DNA from: Euprymna scolopes
Lineage: Eukaryota
Assembly (NCBI GenBank): GCA_053919585.1
Contig: CM132803.1
Strand: one strand, 5' to 3'
DNA length: 64,000 bases
Numbering within the stretch: position 1 is the first letter of the stretch; every line of letters begins with the position of its first letter. The notes under the pieces were generated by a model. The model worked only from the letters and a program-made list of their open reading frames with translations, was not told the DNA's origin and did no database searches. Shown in pieces: positions 6,057 through 61,408 of the stretch. The position numbers and the translations under genes are program-made.

Positions 6057-7659
6057 GTGAGTTTGCCATTAATTTATTTTCCTTCATTTTCTTTGTTAAT
6101 TAAAATGGATGAAGACGGTAGTAGAAGGATGGAAGTGCATCGGTTTTGTTATGAATGTGTGTGACTGAAATTTACTAGTGTATAGAACAAAACAGCATAA
6201 GACGATTCTCATTGTTTCATTTGGATTGTTTAATTCTCTTATTAAACTTGAAAATTATGTGGTTAAAATAAATACTATACTTAAATTTTTTCAAGTTTTT
6301 TTTATTTAACACTTAATAAAATGTTGTTCTACCAATGTTTTTTTTTTATTCTACTGCTATAGATATTCGCTAAGTCAGAAGAATCTTTTTATTAACAAAA
6401 TAATAATAAATCGTTGCTGTCTTAAGGATTAATTAATATTAATTTTTTGTTGATAAAGAGAGACTACTGACTTACAAAATAATATTATTACTAAATTTCA
6501 TGTGTGTGTATATTTTTTTTTTAAATAGTATTTTTTATCCTTTAAATCTAATTGTACACATGAAATATTTTATTTTAGAATTATTTTTTACATTTCATTT
6601 TTATTTGGATCTATTTAATTATTATTAATATTTTTTGAATATTTTTTTTTCAATTGTAAAATTTATACAATATAAAAATCAGTTGTAAAATAAAAGGATT
6701 TATAGAGTATTTTGAAATACATGTATAATTGTGAATTTATTTTAAAATCCTAGTATTTTGATCTTTTATTAATTCAAAATGTATCTAGGATTTTATCATT
6801 ATTATTTGGAGATTATTTATTTATTTATTGTGCTGCTTTTTAAAAAAAGTTATAGTATTTAAGTTTAAAATTATATTGTAATCTCCTGTATCTAAATATT
6901 AGGGTTTTTTTTCTTAAATATTTACCATCTACATGTTCTTTCATACACATCATTATCTGAAACAAGAATTTTAAGAATAATCTATTAGATTAGGATAATA
7001 ATACACATTGAGTCAATGTTGAGATAATGTTCATATATTATTTACAGTATATTGATAGCTATATAACACAAACATTTGCATTTAATAAATGATATATATT
7101 AATTAATTAAGAAAAAATATATTGAGTGGCACAAGATTATTCTTTAAATTTCACTTTTTAATGGATATTTTTTTAAGTAAAAGTTATTCATTAGATACTA
7201 CAAACAGATAATATATTTAAAAAGGAAATCGAAGTATTTTTCATTTCATGCACCTTTAAATTTCATTTATTATCTAAATGACTATTAATTTGTCCCTATT
7301 TCACAGGGTCATTTTTTACTGTTATTATCATTGATTTACATTTAAAATTCTCTTTCTCTATATAAAAAATTATGAACCATCTAATTAATTTTGACTATAT
7401 GTGTTTATTCTGCATTTACACTTTTATATAAAGATTAATTTTTAATTCAAGTAAAACTATATTCACAAACTTAAATAGAAACATATGTGATATACTTGTA
7501 TTATCATTTACTTATGAAAATTATTGAAATCATTAAAAGTGTTAGATACTTACTATTTTTTTAATACTTTTTTTTGCTTAAAATTTCAGATGTTGTAAAG
7601 AATGGAAGTGATTTTTTAGGATATTAAACAGTAAATAAAAAGATATTATTTTGGTAACA

Positions 7660-10062
7660 ATGTGGGCATCAGCATTTATTTTAATTTCAATTTCAATTGG
7701 ACATTTATGTTTTTGTGTGGACCTTACATATCATATAGAAGAAGGGAAAAGCCCTGGTACTTATATTGGAGACATTTCTTCAGATTCTCAAGTGATAAAA
7801 GATATTTCAACTGAAGATAAAAAATCTATTCAATTCAATCTTCTATTACAAGCTGAAACTGGTACGTCTCCATTATTTGATATCTCAAAGAAATCGGGAA
7901 AACTGTACACATCCCAAACTTTGGATGCTGAATCAATGTGTATTTTCAAAAAAGAATGTTTTCAAATGATTGATGTTGCTATTCAAAAAGGAACAACTGT
8001 TATTACATTATTAGAAGTCAAAGTCATCATTCAAGATATCAATGACCATCAACCTGAGTTTCCTGATAAAATTGTCAATATAGAATTTTCTGAAGATGAT
8101 AGTAAAGGAGTTAAACGATCTATACCTCATGCTGTAGATCATGATGTATCATCAATAAATTCACAAATAACTTATCAGCTGAATAAGGAACAAAATGAAC
8201 CATTTTCATTATCTGTCTCCAAAAATCTTGACGGCACATCTAAATTAGTTATTAATCTTGAAAAAAGACTTGATAGAGAAACTAAAAACTCGTACGAAAT
8301 TCAAGTAATTGCTAAAGATAGTGGTTCACCACCAAAACAAAGCATTTTAGATGTTCACGTTTCTGTTATTGATGTCAATGATAATCCACCAATCTTCTCC
8401 CAGAATATTTATAATGTTTCTATTCAAAATATACATGACAAAACAAAACCAGTTGCCATTATTTCAGCTACAGATTTAGATTCAGGTAAAAACAGTAAAA
8501 TCCAGTATCATTACAGCACAAAAACTTTGGATTTTGCAAAACAGTTATTCCAACTAAATGAAGAGAATGGTGAAATTCTTTTGAATAAGAATCCAACTTT
8601 AGGACAACAATCAACTTACGAGTTGTATGTTCAAGCAAAAGATGGAGGAAATCCTTCTTTAAGTTCTATTGCTATAGTCCACATCAATGTGATCAACCAA
8701 GAAAATAATCCACCAAAAATAAAAGTGACTTTTGTCTCCACATCATGGGACAATACAGTGGAGATTTCTGAAAACATCAAAGTAGGAAGTTTCATTGCTT
8801 ATGTGAAAGTGAGCGACCAAGATGAAGGACAGAATGGGGAAGTAAAATGTGAACTAAACCATGATAAATTTCAGCTTCGTATTATGGACAAGCAAAAATA
8901 TCAAGTAATTGTAAAAAGTACATTAGACAGAGAAAAAGAGGAACAACATGACATCATCATCATTTGTAAAGATAAAGGATCTCCTCCTTTGAAAAGTAAA
9001 AGCAGGTTCTCAATTAAAGTGACAGATTTCAATGATGTACAACCACAATTTTCTAAACAGTCATTTGAATTCTTCATTGATGAAAACCAGAGATCGAAAA
9101 TTCCTATTGGCACAATCAATGCCACAGATCCAGACTTGGGACTTGGAGGTAAACTGTCTTTTTCTTTAGTGAGCACCAATAAACAATTTGTACCATTTCG
9201 AATCACTGAAAATGGATTAATCTCTTCAATTATGTCTTTAGACCATGAGTTTCAAGATACTTATAATTTTGAAGTGTTTGTAAAAGACAAAGGAAGTCCA
9301 TCATTGAATAACACAGTGAATGTGATTGTTAAGGTGAGAGATGAAAATGATAATGCTCCATATTTCACATTTCCCAGTGTTAATCCTTATAATATGGATG
9401 TAACATATTACCCGCATCATACAAAGAACATCAGCCAGATAAAGGCATCAGACAGTGACAGTCAAGAGAATGCATTTCTAAAATATGAAATAATCAGAGG
9501 CAATAGCAAACAGATATTCAGCATCAACCAGTACACTGGTTTGTTATGTTCAACTCATGTCCTAAGCCAACAAGATGCTGGCTCATATGAGCTGGAGTTT
9601 CTAGTGAAGGACAGTGGTAGCCCAGTTCTATCAGCCAGAACTACTGTATATTTGACACTGACCGTAAGCAACAAGACATCAGAAATGTTAAATGCTGTTA
9701 ACATCAAAAAGGATAACAAGATCCACCTGACTTCAGCAATTATCATTGTGTCTGTAGCAGTGACAATAGCTGTGATCATTACAGCTTCAATCTCAGTGTG
9801 TATCCTTCGCTGTTGCAATCCTCGAAGTGTTCCAGTAGTAGAAGGTGGATACGTGAGTAGTGGTCAGAGACATTTGATAAGTCCTCCTTACCCAGCAAAT
9901 CCTTGGTCTAATGTTGCTCTTCCTACAAGTGATGCAGTTGATATGAGAAGAAGCAGTCAACCACCAACACCAAGAATGCAAACCCATCCTTACTCAAGTG
10001 CTCAACAAATGCTGTCTTCTCAAACATCAAAATCACAACCTACCCCAGATTCTGTATCTCAG
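7660..10062 (+). CDS. Pcdh: Protocadherin gene 2, exon 2 CDS (signal peptide, EC1-EC6, TM); spliced protein 947 aa
   Basis: First in-frame ATG at 7660 (the ORF track starts at TTG 7651); acceptor tttCAG| at 7589; DxNDxxP linkers, LDRE/DxD/DxG motifs, EC1 C-x5-C; donor CAG|GTAAAT. Confidence 0.95.
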
Positions 10063-10242
10063 GTAAATAATCTTTTTTTTTTTTATATTATTTTTACAAT
10101 GGATGTATTTACAATCAAAACTGTTTACTTTTATGTCTTTAAATATAAGATTTTAAATATTTAGAAAAAATATCAATGTTCCAATCAATACATTTTCTAT
10201 TTTTTTTAATTATAAATATAAGAACATAGTGTAGTTATTGTC

Positions 10243-14665: not shown

Positions 14666-15612
14666 GTAAGTTGGTATATATTGAGTTTTTTTTTTTTAAT
14701 TTCCTTTGTCTCTTTTGTCATGTAAATGATGAAAAACATTCTAAAATTGAAACTGATGAATATAATAATGGTTGCTTTGTGTATGCTAGTTATTTTGCTG
14801 ATGAAAAATTTGAATATAATGATTTATTAAGTATTTTTAGAGTCAGACTTTATTTTATACACACTTCCTTTTTCCCTTTGTATTATTTATTGTCTTTACA
14901 GTGAAATAATATAAAATATTACAAACTCAACAAATAATTGATTATCAGAATTACAATACATTTCTTTTGGCATGATTGATTTCTTGTTTTTCTGTTTCTT
15001 CTTATAGATAGGGAATTTTAACTTGATTTATAAATCAAGTTAAATACATATTTTTAGAATTACCTAATATCAAATAAAATTTACAATGATATTATATCAT
15101 CTTATATCTCAGTTTATGCTATCTTAATAGTGTTCATTTTATAAACCTAATTGTAATCATTTTTTAAAAAAATATTTACTATGACTTTTATTAGTATAAC
15201 AAATGTCTCATTCATTAGATATATTTTAAAACAAATATTTAAGGATTTATATTGATTATTATTGGTATACTTTGTTGAGTCATTAAATAATTTATTTAAC
15301 ATTGAAATAATTAAGTTTTTAACAGTGTAAAACAATCTGATAATTTTTATTTATTCATTGCAGATTTTTAAAATGTGAATCGAATGATTATGTGATCAAT
15401 TTGATTGTTCCTAACATATAATTAGAAACATTTTTAAAAGATTATAAAAATATGGTGCAATATTTTAAATTTCGTTTGAGTTATTTGAAAACACTATTAA
15501 CTAAATTAAATATTATTTCAAAAGCTATTTGTAGATGCTTAATACAATGTTTTGAATATTTGGATTTCAGAGATGGTCAGCTTATGAATGTGTGAGGGAA
15601 TTTACTTTTAAA

Positions 15613-18009
15613 ATGATGCTGAAGATTATAGGTTTAATATGTATAATGATACATATTGGACTCTGCATAGATAAAACTTACCATGTGGAAGAGGGACGAC
15701 AACCAGGTACTTATGTGGGTGATGTTGCAAGCGATTCACAAGTGATGAAGGATATTCCTGATTCTGACCACAGCCTCATTGAATTCAGTCTTCTTCATAA
15801 AGGAGCTACTGGCAATTCTCCATTATTTAAAATATCAAAAAGAACTGGAAAACTTTACACTGCACAAACATTAGATGCAGAATCACTTTGTCATTTTGAA
15901 AAGGAATGTTTTCAAATGGTGAATATAGCAGTAAGGAAATCAACAACTGTTTTCAAGCTATTAGAAATCAAAGTAATAATACAAGACATCAATGATCATC
16001 AGCCAGAGTTTCCGGATAAACAAGTAAATGTAAAATTTGATGAAGATGTATTAATTGGCACAAAAGTTTCAATTCCAAATGCTATAGACAAAGACATAGG
16101 TATTATTAATTCACAAATTACTTATGAACTAAAGAAGACAAAAGATGATCCATTCATATTGTCTACAATGAAGAAAGTTGATGGAACATCTGATCTGAGT
16201 ATAGAATCAGAAGGACTACTCAACAGGGAGATCAAAGACACTTATTCAGTTCAAGTAATTGCAAAAGATGGAGGATCCCCACAAAAACAAAGTGCATTAA
16301 CTGTTCACATTTCAATCACAGATGTAAATGATAATACACCAATATTTTCTAAAAAGGTTTATAATGTTTCTATTGACAGCAAACACAATGAAGCCAAACC
16401 AGTTGTCATATTATCTGCTAAAGATTTAGATTCTGGAGAAAATGGCAAAGTAAAATATCATATTACGGCAAAAACAACTGAAAGCACAAGAAAGATATTC
16501 GACTTAAATGAAATTAATGGAGAATTATTTCTACATAAGAAAGATACAATAAATAAGGAAATGATATACAATTTGTATGTAGAAGCAAAAGATGGAGGTA
16601 ATCCACCTCTACGATCATTAGCAAAGGTTATTGTAATGATGATGAACCAGCAGAATAAAGCTCCATTAATAGATGTAAACTTTTTCTCTACATCCAGAGA
16701 AAACACAGTTGATATTTCTGAGGACATAAAAGTTGGTAGTTTCATTGCTTATGTAAAAGTAAGTGATGAGGATGCTGGTCAGAATGGAGAGGTGAACTGT
16801 GAAATAAAACATGATAAATTTCAGCTTCAGAAGATGGGAATCCTTAAATATCAAGTAATTGTAAAAAGTCCCTTAGACCGTGAAAGAGAAGAGCATCATG
16901 ATATTATAATAATGTGTCAAGATAAAGGATCTCCTCCTTTGAAAAGTAAAAGCAAGTTCTCTGTTAAAGTGATGGATGTTAACGATGTAGAACCAGTGTT
17001 TTCTAAACAATTATTTAAATTCTTCATTGATGAAAACCAAAGATCAAAAATTCCTATTGGCACAATCAATGCCACAGATCCAGACTTGGGACTTGGAGGT
17101 AAACTGTCTTTTTCTTTAGTGAGCACCAATAAACAATTTGTACCATTTCGAATCACTGAAAATGGATTAATCTCTTCAATTATGTCTTTAGACCATGAGT
17201 TTCAAGATACTTATAATTTTGAAGTGTTTGTAAAAGACAAAGGAAGTCCATCATTGAATAACACAGTGAATGTGATTGTTAAGGTGAGAGATGAAAATGA
17301 TAATGCTCCATATTTCACATTTCCCAGTGTTAATCCTTATAATATGGATGTAACATATTACCCGCATCATACAAAGAATATCAGCCAGATAAAGGCATCA
17401 GACAGTGACAGTCAAGAGAATGCATTTCTAAAATATGAAATAATCAGAGGCAATAGCAAACAGATATTCAGCATCAACCAGTACACTGGTTTGTTATGTT
17501 CAACTCATGTCCTAAGCCAACAAGATGCTGGCTCATATGAGCTAGAGTTTCTAGTGAAGGACAGTGGTAGCCCAGTTCTATCAGCCAGAACTACTGTATA
17601 TTTGAGACTGACCGTGAGCAACAAGACATCAGAAATGTTAAATGCTGTTAACATCAAAAAAGATAACAAGATCCACCTGACTTCAGCAATTATCATTGTG
17701 TCTGTAGCAGTGACAATAGCTGTGATCATTACAGCTTCAATCTCAGTGTGTATCCTTCGCTGTTGCAATCCTCGAAGTGTTCCAGTAGCAGAAGGCGGAT
17801 ATGTGAGTAGTGGTCAGAGACATTTGATAAGTCCTCCTTACCCAGCAAATCCTTGGTCTAATGTTGCTCTTCCTACAAGTGATGCAGTTGATATGAGAAG
17901 AAGCAGTCAACCACCAACACCCAGAATGCAAACCCATCCTTATTCAAGTGCTCAACATATGCTGTCTTCTCAAGCATCAAAGCCACAGCCAGTTTCAGTG
18001 TCATCTGAG
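15613..18009 (+). CDS. Pcdh: Protocadherin gene 3, exon 2 CDS; spliced protein 945 aa
   Basis: ATG at 15613 (MMLKIIGLICIMIHIGLC signal peptide); acceptor at 15570; six cadherin repeats and TM; donor GAG|GTAGGT. Confidence 0.95.
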
Positions 18010-18350
18010 GTAGGTTTATTTGCATTTAATCTTTATTATTGCAAATTTGTATATTTCATATAATATTAGTATGTTTATTTTAGCATCTTTATTTAAATAA
18101 GTATACATCTGCTACTTTTTACTTCTGTACTTTTGTTTATTCTAGTTTTTTAATGTTAATATTAACAAAATTTTTTCAATCTTTTTAAAATTGATTATGT
18201 TTATTGAAAGTACCGTATGTCATTTTAAGTACGCACTGTTTTTATTTTTGCTCTGTCAAATATTGCATTTTGACTTGTATATTTTTTGTTGTACTTTATA
18301 TGTTTAACTGCTTTTATCATTTCATAAATTATGATTTTCATTTGATTTAG

Positions 18351-27708: not shown

Positions 27709-30102
27709 ATGCTAAACAAAATATTTCTGCTGGTTTGGATCATAAAAGCTTGTATGTGTACAGATCTTACATACAATGTGGAAGAAGGGAAAAGTCCAGA
27801 TATTTATGTTGGTGATGTTGCTGCTGATTCACATGTGATGAAGGATATTGCTGAGTCTGACCATAAACTAATCGGATTCAGCCTTCTTCATAAAGGGGCT
27901 ACTGCGAATTCTCCATTATTTAGAATATCGAAAGGGACTGGAAAACTATACACTGCACAAACATTAGATGCAGAATCTCTTTGTATTTATAAAAAAGAAT
28001 GTTTTCAGATGGTTGATGTTGCAGTTAGAAAATCAACAACTGTTTTCAAGTTATTAGAAATAAAAGTAATAATACAGGACATCAATGATCATCAGCCAGA
28101 GTTTCCTGATAAACAAATTACTATTGAATTTGAAGAAGGAGATGGTAAAGGTATGAAAAGATCAATTCCAAATGCCATAGACAAAGATGTAGGAATCACT
28201 AATTCACAAATTACTTATGAACTAAAAAAGACCAAAGATGAACCTTTCATATTGTCTACAATGAAAAAAATTGATGGAACATCTGATCTGAGTATAGAAT
28301 TAGAAAGAATGTTAAACAGAGAAGTCAAAGACTCATATAAAATTCAAGTAATTGCAAAAGATGGAGGATCACCACCAAAACAAAGTGTATTGACTGTTCA
28401 CATTTCAATCACAGATGTAAATGATAATAAACCAATATTTTCTAAAAAGGTTTATAATGTTTCTATTGACAGCAAACATAATGAAGCCAAACCAGTTGTC
28501 ATATTATTTGCTAAAGATTTAGATTCTGGAGAAAATGGCAAAGTAAAATATCATATTACGGCAAAAACAACTGAAAGTACAAGAAAGATTTTTGATTTAA
28601 ATGAAATTACTGGAGAATTATTTCTACATAAAAAAGACATATTAAATAAGGAAGTAATATATGAATTATATGTAGAAGCGAGAGATGGAGGTAATCCACC
28701 TTTACGATCATTAGCAATGGTTTTTGTAAATGTTATGAACCAGCAAAATAAAGCTCCATTAATAGATGTGAACTTTTTTTCCACATCCAGAGAAAATACA
28801 GTTGATGTTTCTGAAAACATAAAAGTTGGTAGTTTCATTGCTTATGTAAAAGTAAGTGATGAGGATGCTGGTCAGAATGGAGAGGTGAACTGTGAAATAA
28901 AACATGATAAATTTCAATTGCAAAACATGGGAACCAAGAAATACCAAGTGATAGTGAAAACTCTTTTAGACAGGGAAATTGAAGATCATCACAGTATAAT
29001 TATCAAATGTCAAGACAAAGGATCTCCTCCTCTTCAAAGCAAAAGGACATTTTCTGTACATGTGATTGATGTTAATGATGTACAACCAGTGTTTTCTAAA
29101 CAATTATTTAAATTCTTCATTGATGAAAACCAGAGATCGAAAATTCCTATTGGCACAATCAATGCCACAGATCCAGACTTGGGACTTGGAGGTAAACTGT
29201 CTTTTTCTTTAGTGAGCACCAATAAACAATTTGTACCATTTCGAATCACTGAAAATGGATTAATCTCTTCAATTATGTCTTTAGACCATGAGTTTCAAGA
29301 TATTTATAATTTTGAAGTGTTTGTAAAAGACAAAGGAAGTCCATCATTGAATAACACAGTGAATGTGATTGTTAAGGTGAGAGATGAAAATGATAATGCT
29401 CCATATTTCACATTTCCCAGTGTTAATCCTTATAATATGGATGTAACATATTACCCGCATCATACAAAGAACATCAGCCAGATAAAGGCATCAGACAGTG
29501 ACAGTCAAGAGAATGCATTTCTAAAATATGAAATAATCAGAGGCAATAGCAAACAGATATTCAGCATCAACCAGTACACTGGTTTGTTATGTTCAACTCA
29601 TGTCCTAAGCCAACAAGATGCTGGCTCATATGAGCTGGAGTTTCTAGTGAAGGACAGTGGTAGCCCAGTTCTATCAGCCAGAACTACTGTATATTTGACA
29701 CTGACTGTAAGCAACAAGACATCAGAAATGCTAAATGCTGTTAACATCAAAAAAGATAACAAGATTCACCTGACTTCAGCAATTATCATTGTGTCTGTAG
29801 CAGTGACAATAGCTGTGATCATTACAGCTTCAATCTCAGTGTGTATCCTTCGCTGTTGCAATCCTCGAAGTGTTCCAGTAGCAGAAAGCGGATATGTGAG
29901 TAGTGGTCAGAGACATTTGATAAGTCCTCCTTACCCAGCAAATCCTTGGTCCAATGTTGCTCTTCCTACAAGTGATGCAGTTGATATGAGAAGAAGCAGT
30001 CAACCACCAACACCCAGAATGCAAACCCATCCTTACTCAAGTGCTCAACAAATGCTGTCTTCTCAAACAACAAAACCCCAATTGCTTAACGATTCATCTG
30101 AG
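27709..30102 (+). CDS. Pcdh: Protocadherin gene 4, exon 2 CDS; spliced protein 945 aa
   Basis: ATG 27709; acceptor atttCAG| at 27662; six EC repeats and TM; donor GAG|GTAGGT. Confidence 0.95.
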
Positions 30103-30543
30103 GTAGGTTCATTAACTTGTAGTTTTAGATTTTTATATTTGCAAATTTGATAAACTGTTATAGTTTTAGAATCGTTTTAGAATTCTTATAGAAATTTTTA
30201 TCTTTTATTTATAAATTCCTATTTATTCTATAGATATAGAAAATCCATGCAATTTCTTTGTTTTTGATAGAATTAATGTAATATCTGTTTCTGCAGCCAT
30301 ATTTATCTTTTTCTCTCTCTGTAACTGAATGTTCATATAGGCAAATCTTATCTTTTTCTCAAGAACAAAATGTCCTTAATAATACCGTATTTAGAATCAA
30401 TAAAAAGACTGAATACTTTTTTGTCTACAACATACACAGAAAATACTGCAAAACAAAAGAAAACATTTTTTCATGATTGGATTTTGACAGGTTGTAAATA
30501 ACAAAGAAACACAGATAATTGCAATAAGTTCATGCCACAAGTA

Positions 30544-50708: not shown

Positions 50709-53102
50709 ATGGTACTAAAGGAATTATTTGTACTGGTTTGGATGATAAATGCTTGTATGTGTACAGATTTTACATATAATGTGGAAGAAGGAAAAAGTCC
50801 AGATATTTATGTTGGTGATGTTGCTGCTGATTCACATGTGATTAAGGATATTGCTGAGTCTGACCATAAACTCATTGGATTCAGCCTTCTTCATAAAGGG
50901 GCTACTGCGAATTCTCCATTATTTAGAATATCGAAAAGAACTGGAAAACTATACACTGCACAACCATTAGATGCAGAATCTCTTTGTATTTATAAAAAAG
51001 AATGTTTTCAGATGGTGGATGTTGCAGTTAGAAAATCAACAACTGTTTTCAAGTTATTAGAAATCAAAGTAATAATACAGGATATCAATGATCATCAGCC
51101 AGAGTTTCCGGATAAACAAGTTAATGTGAAATTTAATGAAGATGTTGCCATAGGAACTAAAGTATCAATACCAAATGCTATAGACAAAGATGTAGGAATC
51201 ATTAATTCCCAAATTACTTATGAACTAAAAAATACCAAAGATGAACCTTTCATATTATCTACAATGAAGAAAATTGATGGAACAACTGATCTGAGTATAG
51301 AATTAAAACGACTTCTCAACAGAGAAAACAAGGATTCTTATACAATTCAAGTAATTGCAAAAGATGGAGGATCCCCACCAAAACAAAGTGCATTAACTGT
51401 TCACATTTCAATCACAGATGTAAATGATAATGCACCAATATTTTCTAAAAAGGTTTATAATGTTTCTATTGACAGCAAACACAATGAAGCCAAACCAGTT
51501 GTCATATTATCTGCTAAAGATTTAGATTCTGGAGAAAATGGTAAAGTAAAATATCATATTACGGCAAAAACAACTGAAAGCACAAGAAAGACATTTCATT
51601 TAAATGAAATTACTGGAGAATTATTTTTAAATAAAAAAGACATATTAAATAAGGAAGTAATATATGAATTATATGTAGAAGCGAGAGATGGAGGTAATCC
51701 ACCTTTACGATCATTAGCCATGGTTTTTGTAAATGTTATGAACCAGCAAAATAAAGCTCCATTAATAGATGTGAACTTTTTTTCCACATCCAGGGAAAAT
51801 ACAGTTGATGTTTCTGAAAATATAAAAGTTGGTAGTTTCATTGCTTATGTGAAAGTAAGTGATGAGGATGCTGGTCAGAATGGAGAAGTGAACTGTGAAA
51901 TAAAACATGATAAATTTCAATTGCAAAACATGGGAACCAAGAAATACCAAGTTATAGTGAAAACTCTTTTAGACAGGGAAACTGAAGATCATCACAGTAT
52001 AATTATCAAATGTCAAGACAAAGGATCTCCTCCTCTTCAAAGCAAAAGGACATTTTCTGTACATGTGATTGATGTTAATGATGTAGAACCAGTGTTTTCT
52101 AAACAATTATTTAAATTCTTCATTGATGAAAACCAGAGATCGAAAATTCCTATTGGCACAATCAATGCCACAGATCCAGACTTGGGACTTGGAGGTAAAC
52201 TGTCTTTTTCTTTAGTGAGCACCAATAAACAATTTGTACCATTTCGAATCACTGAAAATGGATTAATCTCTTCAATTATGTCTTTAGACCATGAGTTTCA
52301 AGATACTTATAATTTTGAAGTGTTTGTAAAAGACAAAGGAAGTCCATCATTGAATAACACAGTGAATGTGATTGTTAAGGTGAGAGATGAAAATGATAAT
52401 GCTCCATATTTCACATTTCCCAGTGTTAATCCTTATAATATGGATGTAACATATTACCCGCATCATACAAAGAACATCAGCCAGATAAAGGCATCAGACA
52501 GTGACAGTCAAGAGAATGCATTTCTGAAATATGAAATAATCAGAGGCAATAGCAAACAGATATTCAGCATCAACCAGTACACTGGTTTGTTATGTTCAAC
52601 TCATGTCCTAAGCCAACAAGATGCTGGCTCATATGAGCTGGAGTTTCTAGTGAAGGACAGTGGTAGCCCAGTTCTATCAGCCAGAACTACTGTATATTTG
52701 ACACTGACCGTAAGCAACAAGACATCAGAAATGTTAAATGCTGTTAACATCAAAAAAGATAACAAGATCCACCTGACTTCAGCAATTATCATTGTGTCTG
52801 TAGCAGTGACAATAGCTGTGATCATTACAGCTTCAATCTCAGTGTGTATCCTTCGCTGTTGCAATCCTCGAAGTGTTCCAGTAGCAGAAGGCGGATATGT
52901 GAGTAGTGGTCAGAGACATTTGATAAGTCCTCCTTACCCAGCCAATCCTTGGTCTAATGTTGCTCTTCCTACAAGTGATGCAGTTGATATGAGAAGAAGC
53001 AGTCAACCACCAACACCCAGAATGCAAACACATCCTTACTCAAATGCTCAACAAATGCTGTCATCTCAAGCACCAAAACCAGCTTCAGACTCTATTTCTC
53101 AG
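50709..53102 (+). CDS. Pcdh: Protocadherin gene 6, exon 2 CDS; spliced protein 940 aa
   Basis: ATG 50709; acceptor at 50655; six EC repeats and TM; donor CAG|GTAATA. Confidence 0.95.
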
Positions 53103-53162
53103 GTAATAAATTTATAAATTGTATTGATATTTTTTAAACTGTGTTTTTCTTTTTGAAACAGT

Positions 53163-58513: not shown

Positions 58514-60893
58514 ATGATGACAAGACTAGCATTTTTCCTACTTTCTGTTTTGCACATTTCATTCTGTGTGGACCTTACATATCATATAGAAGAAGGGAAA
58601 AGCCCTGGTGCTTATATTGGAGACATTTCTTCAGATCCTCAAGTGATAAAAGACATTTCAACTGAAGATAAAAAATCTATTCAGTTCAATCTTCTATTAC
58701 AAGCTGAAACTGGTACGTCTCCATTATTTGATATCTCAAAGAAATCGGGAAAACTGTACACATCCCAAACTTTGGATGCTGAATCAATGTGTATTTTCAA
58801 AAAAGAATGTTTTCAAATGATTGATGTTGCTATTCAAAAGGGAACAACTGTTATTACATTATTAGAAGTCAAAGTCATCATTCAAGATATCAATGACCAT
58901 CAACCTGAGTTTCCTGATAAGCAGATTAAAATTAATTTGAATGAGGATGTAAAAAAAGGAACAAAAGTTTTAATTCCCAATGCTATAGATCAAGATGTCA
59001 GTGTGAGAAATTCCAAAATTAAGTATGAACTACAAACACATAAACAGGAACCATTTACATTATTGGTTTCAAAGAATCTTGATGAATCTTCAAAACTTCA
59101 ACTAACTCTAAATGAAGAACTTGACAGGGAAACTAAAAATTTATATAACATTCAAGTAATTGCTAAAGATAGTGGTTTACCACCAAAACAAAGCATTTTA
59201 GATGTTCACGTTTCTGTTATTATTCTTCTCCCAGAATATTTATAATGTTTCTATTCAAAATATACATGACAAAACAAAACCAGTTGCCATTATTTCAGCT
59301 ACAGATTTAGATTCAGGTAAAAACAGTAAAATCCAGTATCATTACAGCACAAAAACTCTGGATTTTGCAAAACAGTTATTCCAACTAAATGAAGAGAATG
59401 GTGAAATTCTTTTGAATAAGAATCCAACTTTAGGACAACAATCAACTTACGAGTTGTATGTTCAAGCGAAAGATGGAGGAAATCCTTCTTTAAGTTCTAT
59501 TGCTATAGTCCACATCAATGTGATCAACCAAGAAAATAATCCACCAAAAATAAAAGTGACTTTTGTCTCCACATCATGGGACAATACAGTGGAGATTTCT
59601 GAAAACATCAAAGTAGGAAGTTTCATTGCTTATGTGAAAGTGAGCGACCAAGATGAAGGACAGAATGGGGAAGTAAAATGTGAACTAAACCATGATAAAT
59701 TTCAGCTTCGTATTATGGACAAGCAAAAATATCAAGTAATTGTAAAAAGTACATTAGACAGAGAAAAAGAGGAACAACATGACATCATCATCATTTGTAA
59801 AGATAAAGGATCTCCTCCTTTGAAAAGTAAAAGCAGGTTCTCAATTAAAGTGACAGATTTCAATGATGTACAACCACAATTTTCTAAACAGTCATTTGAA
59901 TTCTTCATTGATGAAAACCAAAGATCGAAAATTCCTATTGGCACAATCAATGCCACAGATCCAGACTTAGGACTTGGAGGTAAACTGTCTTTTTCTTTAG
60001 TGAGCACCAATAAACAATTTGTACCATTTCGCATCACTGAAAATGGATTAATCTCTTCAATTATGTCTTTAGACCATGAGTTTCAAGATACTTATAATTT
60101 TGAAGTGTTTGTAAAAGACAAAGGAAGTCCATCATTGAATAACACAGTGAATGTGATTGTTAAGGTGAGAGATGAAAATGATAATGCTCCATATTTCACA
60201 TTTCCCAGTGTTAATCCTTATAATATGGATGTAACATATTACCCGCATCATACAAAGAACATCAGCCAGATAAAGGCATCAGACAGTGACAGTCAAGAGA
60301 ATGCATTTCTAAAATATGAAATAATCAGAGGCAATAGCAAACAGATATTCAGCATCAACCAGTACACTGGTTTGTTATGTTCAACTCATGTCCTAAGCCA
60401 ACAAGATGCTGGCTCATATACGCTGGAGTTTCTAGTGAAGGACAGTGGTAGCCCAGTTCTATCAGCCAGAACTACTGTATATTTGACACTGACCGTAAGC
60501 AACAAGACATCAGAAATGTTAAATGCTGTTAACATCAAAAAAGATAACAAGATCCACCTGACTTCAGCAATTATCATTGTGTCTGTAGCAGTGACAATAG
60601 CTGTGATCATTACAGCTTCAATCTCAGTGTGTATCCTTCGCTGTTGCAATCCTCGAAGTGTTCCAGTAGCAGAAGGCGGATATGTGAGTAGTGGTCAGAG
60701 ACATTTGATAAGTCCTCCTTACCCAGCCAATCCTTGGTCTAATGTTGCTCTTCCTACAAGTGATGCAGTTGATATGAGAAGAAGCAGTCAACCACCAACA
60801 CCCAGAATGCAAACTCATCCTTACTCAAGTGCTCAACAAATACTATCTTCTCAAGGATCAAAACCACAACCAGCCTCAAATGATGCATCGCAG
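58514..60893 (+). pseudogene. Pcdh: Protocadherin gene 7, exon 2, frameshifted by a 20-bp deletion at ~59221 (recent pseudogene, null allele or assembly error)
   Basis: Relative to gene 2 it lacks GATGTCAATGATAATCCACC (the DVNDNPP linker), which splits the CDS into ORFs 58514-59245 and 59202-60938. The rest is intact, with donor CAG|GTAGGA at 60893. Tail exons were not found before the window end. Confidence 0.8.
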
Positions 60894-61408
60894 GTAGGAT
60901 TACTTTTTATTGTAATTCATTTGTTTAAATTACTATAATATATCTGCCGAAAGGCTTTTGTATTTAAAATTAACTATTAAACAGTAACTTTACAACATAT
61001 TTCCTTTATTCTTCAATTACATATCTAATATCTTTCATTGCAATTTGTATCATGCCTTTGTATCATGTTTAACTTCTCAAGATCATTTTAGCAGTTTTCC
61101 AAGTTATTTAAAACTTTATTTTAATATAAAATTCAGGATAAATGCTCATATTAAACTACAAGTGAATAAATTAAATTAAATTTTTTATTCAAGCTTCAAG
61201 AAAATTTGTCTCTTCACAACAGAAATATGCAGTTTTGATTTTCTGGAATTTCATGTATTCTATTTACTAACTTCAGTTGTTTTATGCTTTAAATTGACTT
61301 ATGTCTTAATAGAAGTACTCCTTTAATTCTATCTTATTATTTTCCAAATTTAATTCTTAGTTTATATTTTTTATCGAACCAATATTATTTTTTTTAACAT
61401 TTTGCACC

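What the first reader, a model, noticed from the sequence alone, without database searches (positions are those of the whole stretch)
8400..8715. The EC3/EC4 junction has lost canonical Ca2+-binding residues in all paralogs
Seen: the other junctions are canonical (DINDHQP, DVNDNxP, DxNDVxP, DENDNAP, with LD[AR]E/LNRE/LDHE and xE motifs). EC3 lacks the xE (VSIQN / VSIDS) and the DRE (PTLGQQ, TINKE, ILNKE, TLQKD), and its linker is NQENNPP / NQQNKAP / DQKNKAP. Known: these acidic motifs coordinate the three junction Ca2+ ions, and Ca2+-poor linkers create bends in PCDH15, DN-cadherin and Dachsous/Fat. Inference: a conserved hinge or kink mid-ectodomain, implying a trans-binding geometry different from the vertebrate antiparallel EC1-EC4 dimer.
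Basis: partly seen in the sequence, partly recalled or inferred. Interest (0 to 1): 0.7.

Follow-up and report, generated by a model that had tools for sequence, protein, structure and literature searches.

The report
Calcium-poor joint in cephalopod protocadherins
All six cell-recognition (protocadherin) genes in this window, and every squid, cuttlefish and octopus relative I sampled, lack most of the calcium-binding residues at one joint in the middle of the protein's outer part. That joint probably holds one calcium ion instead of three, but whether this makes the protein bend or changes how it binds is untested.

Summary
The window carries five intact and one frameshifted single-exon 6-EC protocadherin genes.

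**What is lost and what is kept**
- At four junctions, the five acidic Ca2+ ligands supplied by the upstream repeat and the linker are present at 4.9-5.0 of 5 positions.
- At EC3-EC4 the mean is 0.49 of 5, across 125 relatives.
- The three EC4-side ligands (DXD, XDX) and the DXDXGXN Asn are kept in 124-125 of 125.

**How widely it is shared**
- The linker reads NQQNN in both decapods and octopods.
- Its fourth residue is Asn in 125 of 125 relatives, encoded by both AAT and AAC. This is conserved, not decay.
- 485 of 488 scanned vertebrate clustered-Pcdh EC-pair junctions read D.ND.; two of the three exceptions are alphaC1-like EC3-EC4 linkers.

**Best reading**
- It is a partial Ca2+-free linker of the PCDH15 EC5-EC6 type: sites 1-2 lost, site 3 probably kept.
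- It predates the squid/octopus split.

**What remains open**
- A hinge is plausible from precedent, but AlphaFold gives only weak support: a non-canonical orientation, no sharp kink.
- A different trans-dimer geometry is untested.

I found no paper reporting it.

The parts
7651..10164 (+). W1, protocadherin paralog 1: single ORF holding signal peptide, EC1-EC6, TM and juxtamembrane region
   Evidence: ORF. Pfam Cadherin x5 plus Cadherin_2. Colinear with EC1-6 structures 6vg1 and 6e6b.
8392..8715 (+). W1 EC3 repeat (residues 248-355), the repeat that has lost its C-terminal Ca2+ ligands
   Evidence: Domain bounds. EC3 has the lowest AF2 confidence of the six repeats.
8422..8433 (+). W1 XEX-equivalent, I258-Q259-N260-I261; Asn sits at the canonical Glu position
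   Evidence: By spacing, position 260 is 15 residues before DXD, as in EC2 and EC4. No Glu at position 260 in any of 125 relatives.
8602..8610 (+). W1 DRE-equivalent, G318-Q319-Q320
   Evidence: The family most often has GQK or GQE here.
8695..8709 (+). W1 EC3-EC4 linker, N349-Q350-E351-N352-N353, in place of DXNDN
   Evidence: N352 is Asn in 125 of 125 relatives, encoded by AAT x14 and AAC x11 in 25 genomic copies.
8815..8835 (+). W1 EC4 DXDXGXN motif (D389-Q-D391-E-G-Q-N395): site-3 ligands retained
   Evidence: D389 and D391 in 125 of 125, N395 in 124 of 125.
8968..8976 (+). W1 EC4 XDX motif (K-D441-K): site-3 ligand retained
   Evidence: D441 in 125 of 125.
16372..16659 (+). W2 (gene 15592-18063), EC3 from XEX-equivalent to linker: IDSK 16372-16383, NKE 16552-16560, NQQNK 16645-16659
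28465..28752 (+). W3 (gene 27709-30150): IDSK 28465-28476, NKE 28645-28653, NQQNK 28738-28752
38072..38359 (+). W4 (gene 37316-39763): IDSK 38072-38083, QKD 38252-38260, DQKNK 38345-38359. Lys sits at the Asn102-equivalent, a site-3 ligand position.
51468..51755 (+). W5 (gene 50709-53117): IDSK 51468-51479, NKE 51648-51656, NQQNK 51741-51755
59253..59540 (+). Copy 6 (58514-60938, frameshifted): IQNI 59253-59264, GQQ 59433-59441, NQENN 59526-59540. Identical to W1 over EC3-EC4.
   Evidence: The 20-bp deletion in the EC2-EC3 linker is shown.

Best explanation
The EC3-EC4 junction of these protocadherins is a conserved partial Ca2+-free linker.

**Shown**
- The upstream-side ligands that build Ca2+ sites 1 and 2 are replaced by Asn, Gln, Gly, Lys or Ser. 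These are the XEX Glu, the DRE Asp and Glu, and both Asp of DXNDN.
- The downstream-side ligands that build site 3 are invariant: DXD, the Asn of DXDXGXN, and XDX at the top of EC4.
- The replacement is held by selection and is shared by decapod and octopod protocadherins. It therefore predates both lineage-specific expansions.

**Inferred from the PCDH15 EC5-EC6 precedent**
- The junction binds at most one Ca2+, at site 3. Even that is doubtful in copies with Lys at the third linker position, such as W4.
- It is less rigidly fixed by Ca2+ than the four canonical junctions.

**Open**
- The junction may be a flexible hinge, or it may be set by the conserved polar network.
- The effect on the presumed EC1-EC4 antiparallel trans dimer is unknown.
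For: **Ligand counts in 125 sequences**
- ECn-side and linker acidic ligands average 0.49 of 5 at EC3-EC4, against 4.94-5.00 of 5 at the other junctions.
- EC4-side ligands are 3 of 3 in all sequences.

**Breadth**
- Twenty paralogs spread over 3.7-114 Mb of the same chromosome show the same pattern.
- Octopus and Argonauta proteins share the NQQNN linker and the loss of XEX and DRE.

**Selection**
- N352 is invariant, with AAT 14 and AAC 11 among 25 genomic copies.
- P355 and I357 are also fixed.

**Homologous register**
- The protein aligns colinearly with EC1-6 of 6vg1 and 6e6b.

**Precedent**
- PCDH15 EC5-6 has a modified XEX, no DRE and linker PPNNQ, with DXD and XDX kept. Its structures show one Ca2+ at site 3 and divergent orientations (PMC7547225).

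**AF2**
- The EC3-4 linker has the lowest linker pLDDT: 65 against 77-88 in the EC1-6 model, and 78 in the two-domain model, which has pTM 0.55.
- References that fit the model's EC5-6 at 2.5-2.9 A fit EC3-4 at 6.1-6.7 A.
Against: - No Ca2+ stoichiometry, structure or dynamics can be obtained from sequence.
- AF2 shows no sharp kink: EC3-6 fits canonical EC3-6 crystals at 6.0-8.0 A over about 410 residues. Its inter-domain confidence is low.
- Nearby non-canonical acidic residues could build an unconventional site. These are E261 in 77 of 125, D358 in 68 of 125, E320 in 41 of 125, and D259 in W2-W5.
- The strong conservation of NQQNN fits a fixed, structured junction at least as well as a floppy one.
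- Outgroup sampling is thin: only two bivalve sequences.
Confidence: 0.7

Rival explanations
1. The junction is Ca2+-poor but rigid and near-canonical. The conserved Asn/Gln/Lys network, perhaps with the conserved N255 glycan, replaces Ca2+ as the brace. There is then no functional hinge, and the vertebrate-type antiparallel EC1-4 trans dimer is kept.
For: - N352 is invariant, and NQQNN is conserved across decapods and octopods.
- The full-length AF2 model keeps EC3-6 within 6-8 A of canonical EC3-6 crystals.
- EC1-4 are the variable repeats and EC5-6 are homogenised, as in the vertebrate recognition unit.
Against: - Known linkers with this motif pattern (PCDH15 EC5-6, EC3-4) are flexible in crystals and simulations (PMC7547225).
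- The isolated EC3-4 AF2 pair deviates from every canonical pair by 5.0-8.4 A.
- This junction has the lowest linker confidence in the EC1-6 model.
Confidence: 0.2
2. Two or three Ca2+ still bind through shifted, non-canonical acidic residues such as E261, D259, E320, E350/E351 or D358. On this reading the junction is functionally canonical despite the motif changes.
For: Acidic residues occur next to the lost ligand positions: E261 in 77 of 125, D358 in 68 of 125, E320 in 41 of 125. W4 keeps D349 and D320.
Against: - These residues are not conserved. W1 has none of E261, E320 or D358.
- 70 of 125 sequences have 0 of 5 canonical acidic ligands.
- Lys or Arg is common at positions 259 and 320.
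- I found no charge-compensation pattern.
Confidence: 0.06
3. A-to-I RNA editing restores ligands. Asn (AAY) to Asp and Lys (AAR) to Glu each need one A-to-G change, so Ca2+ binding at this junction could be tuned after transcription.
For: The codons at N349 and N352 are AAC/AAT, and K259 and K320 are common. Coleoid protocadherins are reported as enriched in editing (bioRxiv 10.1101/714394).
Against: - 26 proteins from short Logan contigs, probably transcript assemblies, all read Asn at 352 and Asn or Ser at 349.
- Gly318 and the Gln residues cannot be turned into acids by editing.
- The alphaC1-like protein of Latimeria, a vertebrate, also has Asn at both linker Asp positions.
Confidence: 0.03
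4. Relaxed constraint: the motifs have simply decayed in a fast-evolving gene family and carry no specific meaning.
For: EC3 is the most variable repeat (mean pairwise identity 0.57). The DRE-equivalent positions are variable (entropy 2.1-2.7 bits).
Against: - N352, P355, I357 and the EC4-side ligands are invariant.
- The same linker is kept in octopods and decapods.
- N352 shows synonymous codon turnover.
- The other four junctions are intact in the same proteins.
Confidence: 0.01

Closest known systems
PCDH15 EC5-EC6 partial Ca2+-free linker (Choudhary et al. 2020, PMC7547225)
   Same: Modified XEX, no DRE and a degenerate DXNDN (PPNNQ), with DXD and XDX of the next repeat kept. Structures show one Ca2+ at site 3 and variable inter-repeat orientation. 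The motif pattern matches EC3-EC4 here.
   Different: PCDH15 is an 11-EC tip-link cadherin under tension, and this is a single ortholog. Here the feature is fixed across hundreds of paralogs of a 6-EC recognition protein. The linker is a conserved N-Q-Q-N-N with an invariant fourth Asn. Ca2+ content is not measured here.
Vertebrate clustered protocadherin alphaC1 EC3:EC4 linker (Thu 2014, as cited in Goodman 2022, PMC8901172)
   Same: It is the same junction in a 6-EC protocadherin and lacks the full set of Ca2+ ligands. The Latimeria alphaC1-like protein reads MGN / FQQ / NVNNN, and a bird alphaC1-like protein reads LEN / VQR / DVNNH. alphaC1 is the only clustered Pcdh (cPcdh) that fails cell-aggregation assays.
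   Different: In vertebrates it is one isoome among about 50-60; 485 of 488 scanned vertebrate EC-pair junctions read D.ND.. In coleoids every sampled member has the deficient linker. Identity to the window proteins is only about 31-34%, as for other cPcdhs, so this is most likely convergent. The extent of loss varies among alphaC1 sequences.
Complete Ca2+-free linkers (DN-cadherin EC2-EC3; PCDH15 EC9-EC10)
   Same: XEX, DRE and DXNDN ligands are lost. These linkers are known to bend or kink (PMC8325961, PMC7547225). The AF2 EC3-4 pair fits the rigid-body-docked 'straight, tilted' PCDH15 EC9-10 of 6C13 best, at 3.0 A over 204 residues.
   Different: Those linkers have no Ca2+ at all. Here the EC4-side site-3 ligands are invariant. 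The L-shaped EC9-10 crystals fit poorly, at 12.3-12.4 A. 6C13 is an 11.3 A map, so that match carries little weight.
Vertebrate delta2 and clustered protocadherin ectodomains (6vg1, 6vg4, 6e6b)
   Same: Six ECs in one-to-one register at 29-31% identity. Genes sit in a tandem array with a single large exon. EC1-4 are variable and EC5-6 are homogenised.
   Different: Their EC3-EC4 linker is canonical: VIDVNDNAP in 6vg1, and DVNDN/DINDN in the Mobula and Latimeria rows.

Membership tests
Protocadherin with six EC repeats, clustered type | Six cadherin repeats followed by a TM segment, encoded in one large exon | tested here: met
   Single ORFs of 802-837 aa. Pfam Cadherin x5 plus Cadherin_2. Colinear alignment to EC1-6 of 6vg1 and 6e6b.
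Protocadherin with six EC repeats, clustered type | Tandem array of paralogs on one strand | tested here: met
   Six copies on the + strand of the window. At least 150 EC3-EC4 matches, nearly all on contig C21.
Protocadherin with six EC repeats, clustered type | Homophilic antiparallel EC1-EC4 trans dimer | not testable with these tools
   Indirect only: EC1-4 are variable and EC5-6 homogenised. The AF2 monomer seems to fold back at EC2-3, but no coordinates were available to check contacts.
Canonical three-Ca2+ cadherin linker (XEX, DRE, DXNDN, DXD, XDX) | XEX Glu at the base of the upstream repeat | tested here: not met
   At EC3-EC4, position 260 is Asn in 103, Tyr in 9 and Ser in 7 of 125, with no Glu. 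The feature is met at the other four junctions.
Canonical three-Ca2+ cadherin linker (XEX, DRE, DXNDN, DXD, XDX) | DRE (Asp and Glu) in the upstream repeat | tested here: not met
   GQK, GQE, GQQ or NKE at EC3. DRE, DAE or DHE at the other junctions.
Canonical three-Ca2+ cadherin linker (XEX, DRE, DXNDN, DXD, XDX) | DXNDN linker | tested here: not met
   NQQNN-type linker. First position Asp in 4 of 125, fourth position Asn in 125 of 125.
Canonical three-Ca2+ cadherin linker (XEX, DRE, DXNDN, DXD, XDX) | DXD and XDX on the downstream repeat | tested here: met
   D389, D391 and D441 in 125 of 125; N395 in 124 of 125.
Partial Ca2+-free linker, PCDH15 EC5-EC6 type | Upstream-side motifs lost while downstream-side site-3 motifs are kept | tested here: met
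   The definition is taken from PMC7547225.
Partial Ca2+-free linker, PCDH15 EC5-EC6 type | A single Ca2+ bound at site 3 | not testable with these tools
   Needs a structure or Ca2+ titration. The third linker residue is Gln in 91, Lys in 13, Glu in 12 and Asn in 6 of 125. The site may be absent in the Lys forms.
Partial Ca2+-free linker, PCDH15 EC5-EC6 type | Variable or flexible inter-repeat orientation | tested here: inconclusive
   AF2 only. Lowest linker pLDDT and pTM 0.55. EC3-4 lies 5.0-8.4 A from canonical pairs, against 2.5-2.9 A for EC5-6 controls. No sharp kink.
Complete Ca2+-free linker (DN-cadherin EC2-3, PCDH15 EC9-10) | No Ca2+ ligands on either side of the junction | tested here: not met
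   The EC4-side ligands are invariant.
Pcdh alphaC1 (vertebrate C-type isoform) | Orthology to alphaC1 | tested here: not met
   The Latimeria alphaC1-like query hits the own genome at only 31-34% identity, no better than generic cPcdh relatives. The resemblance is confined to the junction.

The most novel reading that the evidence does not exclude
Every coleoid protocadherin may be alphaC1-like at the centre of its recognition unit. The Ca2+-poor EC3-EC4 joint would then stop these proteins forming the rigid vertebrate-type antiparallel EC1-EC4 dimer. Recognition would instead use a hinged or otherwise different trans, or cis-only, architecture, possibly tunable by Ca2+ or by RNA editing of the Asn and Lys codons. 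The cephalopod neuronal surface code would then rest on a different structural logic from the vertebrate one, despite convergent gene expansion.
Probability: 0.15. Interest if true: 0.75.

Novelty: new member of a known kind. Interest (0 to 1): 0.5.

Why it matters
Cephalopod protocadherin expansions are widely cited as convergent with the vertebrate neuronal self-recognition code. Yet none of the papers I could search reports their adhesion or structure.

In vertebrates, trans recognition runs across EC1-EC4. The only clustered isoform with a deficient EC3:EC4 Ca2+ site, alphaC1, is also the only one that fails to mediate aggregation.

The same junction is deficient in every sampled coleoid family member, is conserved by selection, and predates the squid/octopus split. 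This gives a concrete, testable structural difference at the heart of the presumed recognition unit. It tells experimenters which fragment to crystallise and which junction to probe.

It also adds a large, naturally varied set of sequences to the known class of partial Ca2+-free cadherin linkers.

Tried and rejected
**Searches that did not give the wanted relatives**
1. The full-library representative search was dominated by giant cadherins whose many repeats add up in score. It still yielded five octopod clusters, two of unknown taxon, one bivalve fusion model and vertebrate fusion models.
2. A region search with the bivalve protein was again swamped by giant cadherins, so no further non-cephalopod mollusc Pcdhs were found. 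Whether the loss predates cephalopods is therefore open. The two Tegillarca units keep XEX but read DVHNN/DVVNS at the linker.
3. Searching the own genome with the Latimeria alphaC1-like protein found nothing closer than the generic family, at 31-34% identity.

**Ideas tested and dropped**
5. Charge covariation among positions 259, 261, 320, 351 and 358 showed no compensation pattern.
6. A sharp L-shaped kink is not supported by AF2: the fit to PCDH15 EC9-10 crystals is 12.3-12.4 A.
7. Decay under relaxed constraint is contradicted by the invariant N352 with synonymous codon turnover.

**Literature**
8. Eight full-text searches and several targeted readings found no report of this feature in cephalopods. 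Albertin 2015 is not held in the library.
Full report
**What is in the window**

The + strand carries five intact ORFs of 802-837 aa and a sixth copy split by a frameshift.
- W1: 7651-10164
- W2: 15592-18063
- W3: 27709-30150
- W4: 37316-39763
- W5: 50709-53117
- Copy 6: 58514-60938, frameshifted

Each intact ORF has five Pfam Cadherin stretches plus an N-terminal Cadherin_2. Each aligns colinearly, repeat for repeat, with solved EC1-EC6 ectodomains of Xenopus PCDH8.1 (6vg1), human PCDH10 (6vg4) and mouse PcdhgammaB4 (6e6b) at 29-31% identity. The junction in question is therefore homologous to vertebrate EC3-EC4.

The nearest named proteins are from the cuttlefish Acanthosepion pharaonis. The genome is 5.9 Gb, and at least 150 EC3-EC4 matches lie almost entirely on one contig, C21. 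This is a decapodiform cephalopod protocadherin array.

**The observation**

The W1 codons lie inside the reported interval:
- XEX region: 8422-8433
- DRE position: 8602-8610
- Linker: 8695-8709

By spacing to the DXD motif, which lies 15 residues downstream in EC2 and EC4, the canonical Glu position is N260 in W1 and S260 in W2-W5.

I mapped the eight canonical acidic ligand positions (equivalents of E11, D67, E69, D100, D103, D134, D136 and D195) at all five junctions. The set was 125 sequences: the five window copies plus 120 relatives of at least 53% identity.
- The five ligands from the upstream repeat and linker are acidic at 4.94-5.00 of 5 positions at four junctions.
- At EC3-EC4 the mean is 0.49 of 5: none in 70 sequences, one in 49, two in 6.
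- The three EC4-side ligands are acidic in all 125.
- The most common EC3-EC4 forms are IKN(E) for XEX, GQK or GQE for DRE, and NQQNN for DXNDN.

**Breadth and selection**

- Twenty further paralogs, taken from 3.7 to 114 Mb along the chromosome, all show the same pattern.
- Octopus vulgaris, O. sinensis, O. bimaculoides and Argonauta hians proteins are 50-54% identical to W1. They have the same NQQNN linker and also lack XEX and DRE at EC3.
- Published work describes the decapod and octopod expansions as largely independent (PMC13218726). The feature was therefore present in the protocadherin(s) of their common ancestor.
- The fourth linker residue, canonically Asp, is Asn in 125 of 125. P355 (125 of 125) and I357 (124 of 125) are also fixed.
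- In 25 genomic copies this Asn is encoded by AAT 14 times and AAC 11 times. That is synonymous turnover under amino-acid constraint.
- Two units of a bivalve (Tegillarca) fusion model keep the XEX Glu but read DVHNN and DVVNS at the linker. Erosion may have begun earlier, but my two attempts to sample more non-cephalopod molluscs were swamped by giant cadherins.

**Vertebrate comparison**

- Mobula and Latimeria clustered Pcdh units have canonical LEN / D[YF]E / D[VIM]NDN at EC3-EC4.
- In a scan of 120 vertebrate clustered-Pcdh models, 485 of 488 two-repeat alignments have a D.ND. linker.
- Two of the three exceptions read DVNNH with LEN/VQR: the EC3-EC4 linker of a bird alphaC1-like protein and an unnamed protein with the same pattern. 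The third, DVIDN in P0520, is unrelated to alphaC1.
- The Latimeria alphaC1-like protein reads MGN / FQQ / NVNNN.
- This matches the literature. [quoted passage not shown] It is the one clustered Pcdh (cPcdh) that does not mediate cell aggregation (Goodman et al. 2022, PMC8901172, citing Thu 2014).
- The window proteins are no closer to alphaC1 than to other cPcdhs, at 31-34% identity. The resemblance is most likely convergent.

**Mechanism**

The motif pattern here is a modified XEX, no DRE and a degenerate DXNDN, with DXD and XDX of the next repeat kept. This is the pattern described for PCDH15 EC5-EC6. Three crystal conformers of that junction each show a single Ca2+ at site 3 and substantially different inter-repeat orientations (PMC7547225).

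By that precedent I infer three things:
- Sites 1 and 2 are gone.
- Site 3 is probably occupied in most copies. The third linker residue is Gln or Glu in most, but Lys in 13 of 125, including W4, where the site may be lost.
- The junction is less constrained by Ca2+ than its neighbours.

Complete and partial Ca2+-free linkers are generally associated with bending (PMC8325961).

**Structure prediction**

The full ectodomain model (pLDDT 81.5, pTM 0.48):
- EC3 is the least confident repeat.
- Linker pLDDT by junction:

| Junction | Linker pLDDT |
|---|---|
| EC1-2 | 88 |
| EC2-3 | 77/67 |
| EC3-4 | 65 |
| EC4-5 | 84 |
| EC5-6 | 86 |

- EC3-EC6 superposes on gammaB2, gammaB7, gammaA4 and Pcdh19 EC3-6 crystals at 6.0-8.0 A over about 410 residues. 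There is no sharp kink at EC3-4.
- EC1-3 fit at 25-27 A and EC1-4 at about 50 A, which implies a fold-back at EC2-3.
- This could be an artefact. It could also be AF2 satisfying antiparallel EC1:EC4 and EC2:EC3 contacts within one chain. I could not inspect coordinates.

The isolated EC3-EC4 model (pLDDT 88.9, pTM 0.55):
- It lies 5.0-8.4 A from every canonical two-repeat structure.
- The same reference pairs (6vfv, 5vt8, 5wjm) that fit the full model's EC5-6 at 2.5-2.9 A fit EC3-4 at 6.1-6.7 A.
- L-shaped PCDH15 EC9-10 crystals fit at 12.3-12.4 A.
- The best two-domain fit, 3.0 A over 204 residues, is the 'straight' but tilted Ca2+-free EC9-10 of 6C13. That is a rigid-body model in an 11.3 A map, so it carries little weight.

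Overall, AF2 gives weak support for a non-canonical, poorly defined orientation and none for a sharp kink.

**Trans-binding geometry**

Mean pairwise identity in the family is 0.57-0.66 for EC1-4 and 0.73-0.74 for EC5-6. Within the window the figures are 0.75-0.83 against 0.99-1.00. That is the profile expected if EC1-4 is the recognition unit, as in vertebrates. The alphaC1 precedent keeps an altered or weakened trans interaction as a live possibility.

**RNA editing idea**

Asn (AAY) to Asp and Lys (AAR) to Glu each need one A-to-G change, and coleoid Pcdhs are reported as enriched in editing.

Indirect evidence argues against majority-level recoding:
- 26 proteins from short Logan contigs, probably transcripts, all read Asn at position 352.
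- Gly318 and the Gln residues cannot be restored by editing.

**Tool notes**

**Verdict**

The junction is best classed as a conserved partial Ca2+-free linker of the PCDH15 EC5-6 type. Its closest protocadherin analogue is vertebrate alphaC1. The mechanical and adhesive consequences remain to be measured. I found no published report.

Noticed in passing
window 58514-60938 (deletion near 59222): Copy 6 is a W1-like paralog with a 20-bp deletion that removes the EC2-EC3 DVNDNPP linker codons and shifts the frame. It is either a pseudogene or an assembly slip. Its EC3-EC4 is identical to W1.
   Followed up: partly
W1 residues 255-257 (window 8413-8421) and equivalents in all paralogs: An N-V-S glycosylation sequon lies just before the degenerate XEX of EC3. 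It is kept in 123 of 125 (Asn) and 124 of 125 (Ser/Thr) relatives and in the octopod sequences, but is absent from the vertebrate cPcdh rows. A glycan next to the Ca2+-poor junction might affect its stiffness.
   Followed up: no
window 9046-10020 and equivalents in W2-W5: EC5, EC6, TM and the juxtamembrane region are 98-100% identical among the window copies, while EC1-4 are 75-83% identical. This homogenised 'constant' block is already covered by another finding (s1-259181).
   Followed up: partly
AF2 model m0e33afbd4cc0 (W1 residues 23-680): The monomer model appears to fold back at the canonical EC2-EC3 junction: 25-27 A from EC1-3 crystals and about 50 A from EC1-4 crystals. It may mimic antiparallel EC1:EC4 and EC2:EC3 trans contacts within one chain, or it may be an artefact.
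   Followed up: no
EC4-EC5 junction, W1 G499 (window 9145-9147) and equivalents: The Asn of DXDXGXN at the top of EC5 is Gly in 119 of 125 relatives (DPDLGxGG). This is a small conserved departure at an otherwise canonical junction.
   Followed up: no
EC2 DRE, W2-W5 (e.g. window 16222-16230 in W2): The EC2 DRE motif reads NRE rather than DRE in W2-W5 and in 8 of 125 relatives. This is a one-ligand weakening of the EC2-EC3 junction.
   Followed up: no
EC4 N-terminus, W1 residues 356-371 (window 8716-8763): Mollusc sequences carry about three extra residues in the EC4 A-strand region just after the degenerate linker, relative to vertebrate clustered Pcdhs (gap in the alignment).
   Followed up: no
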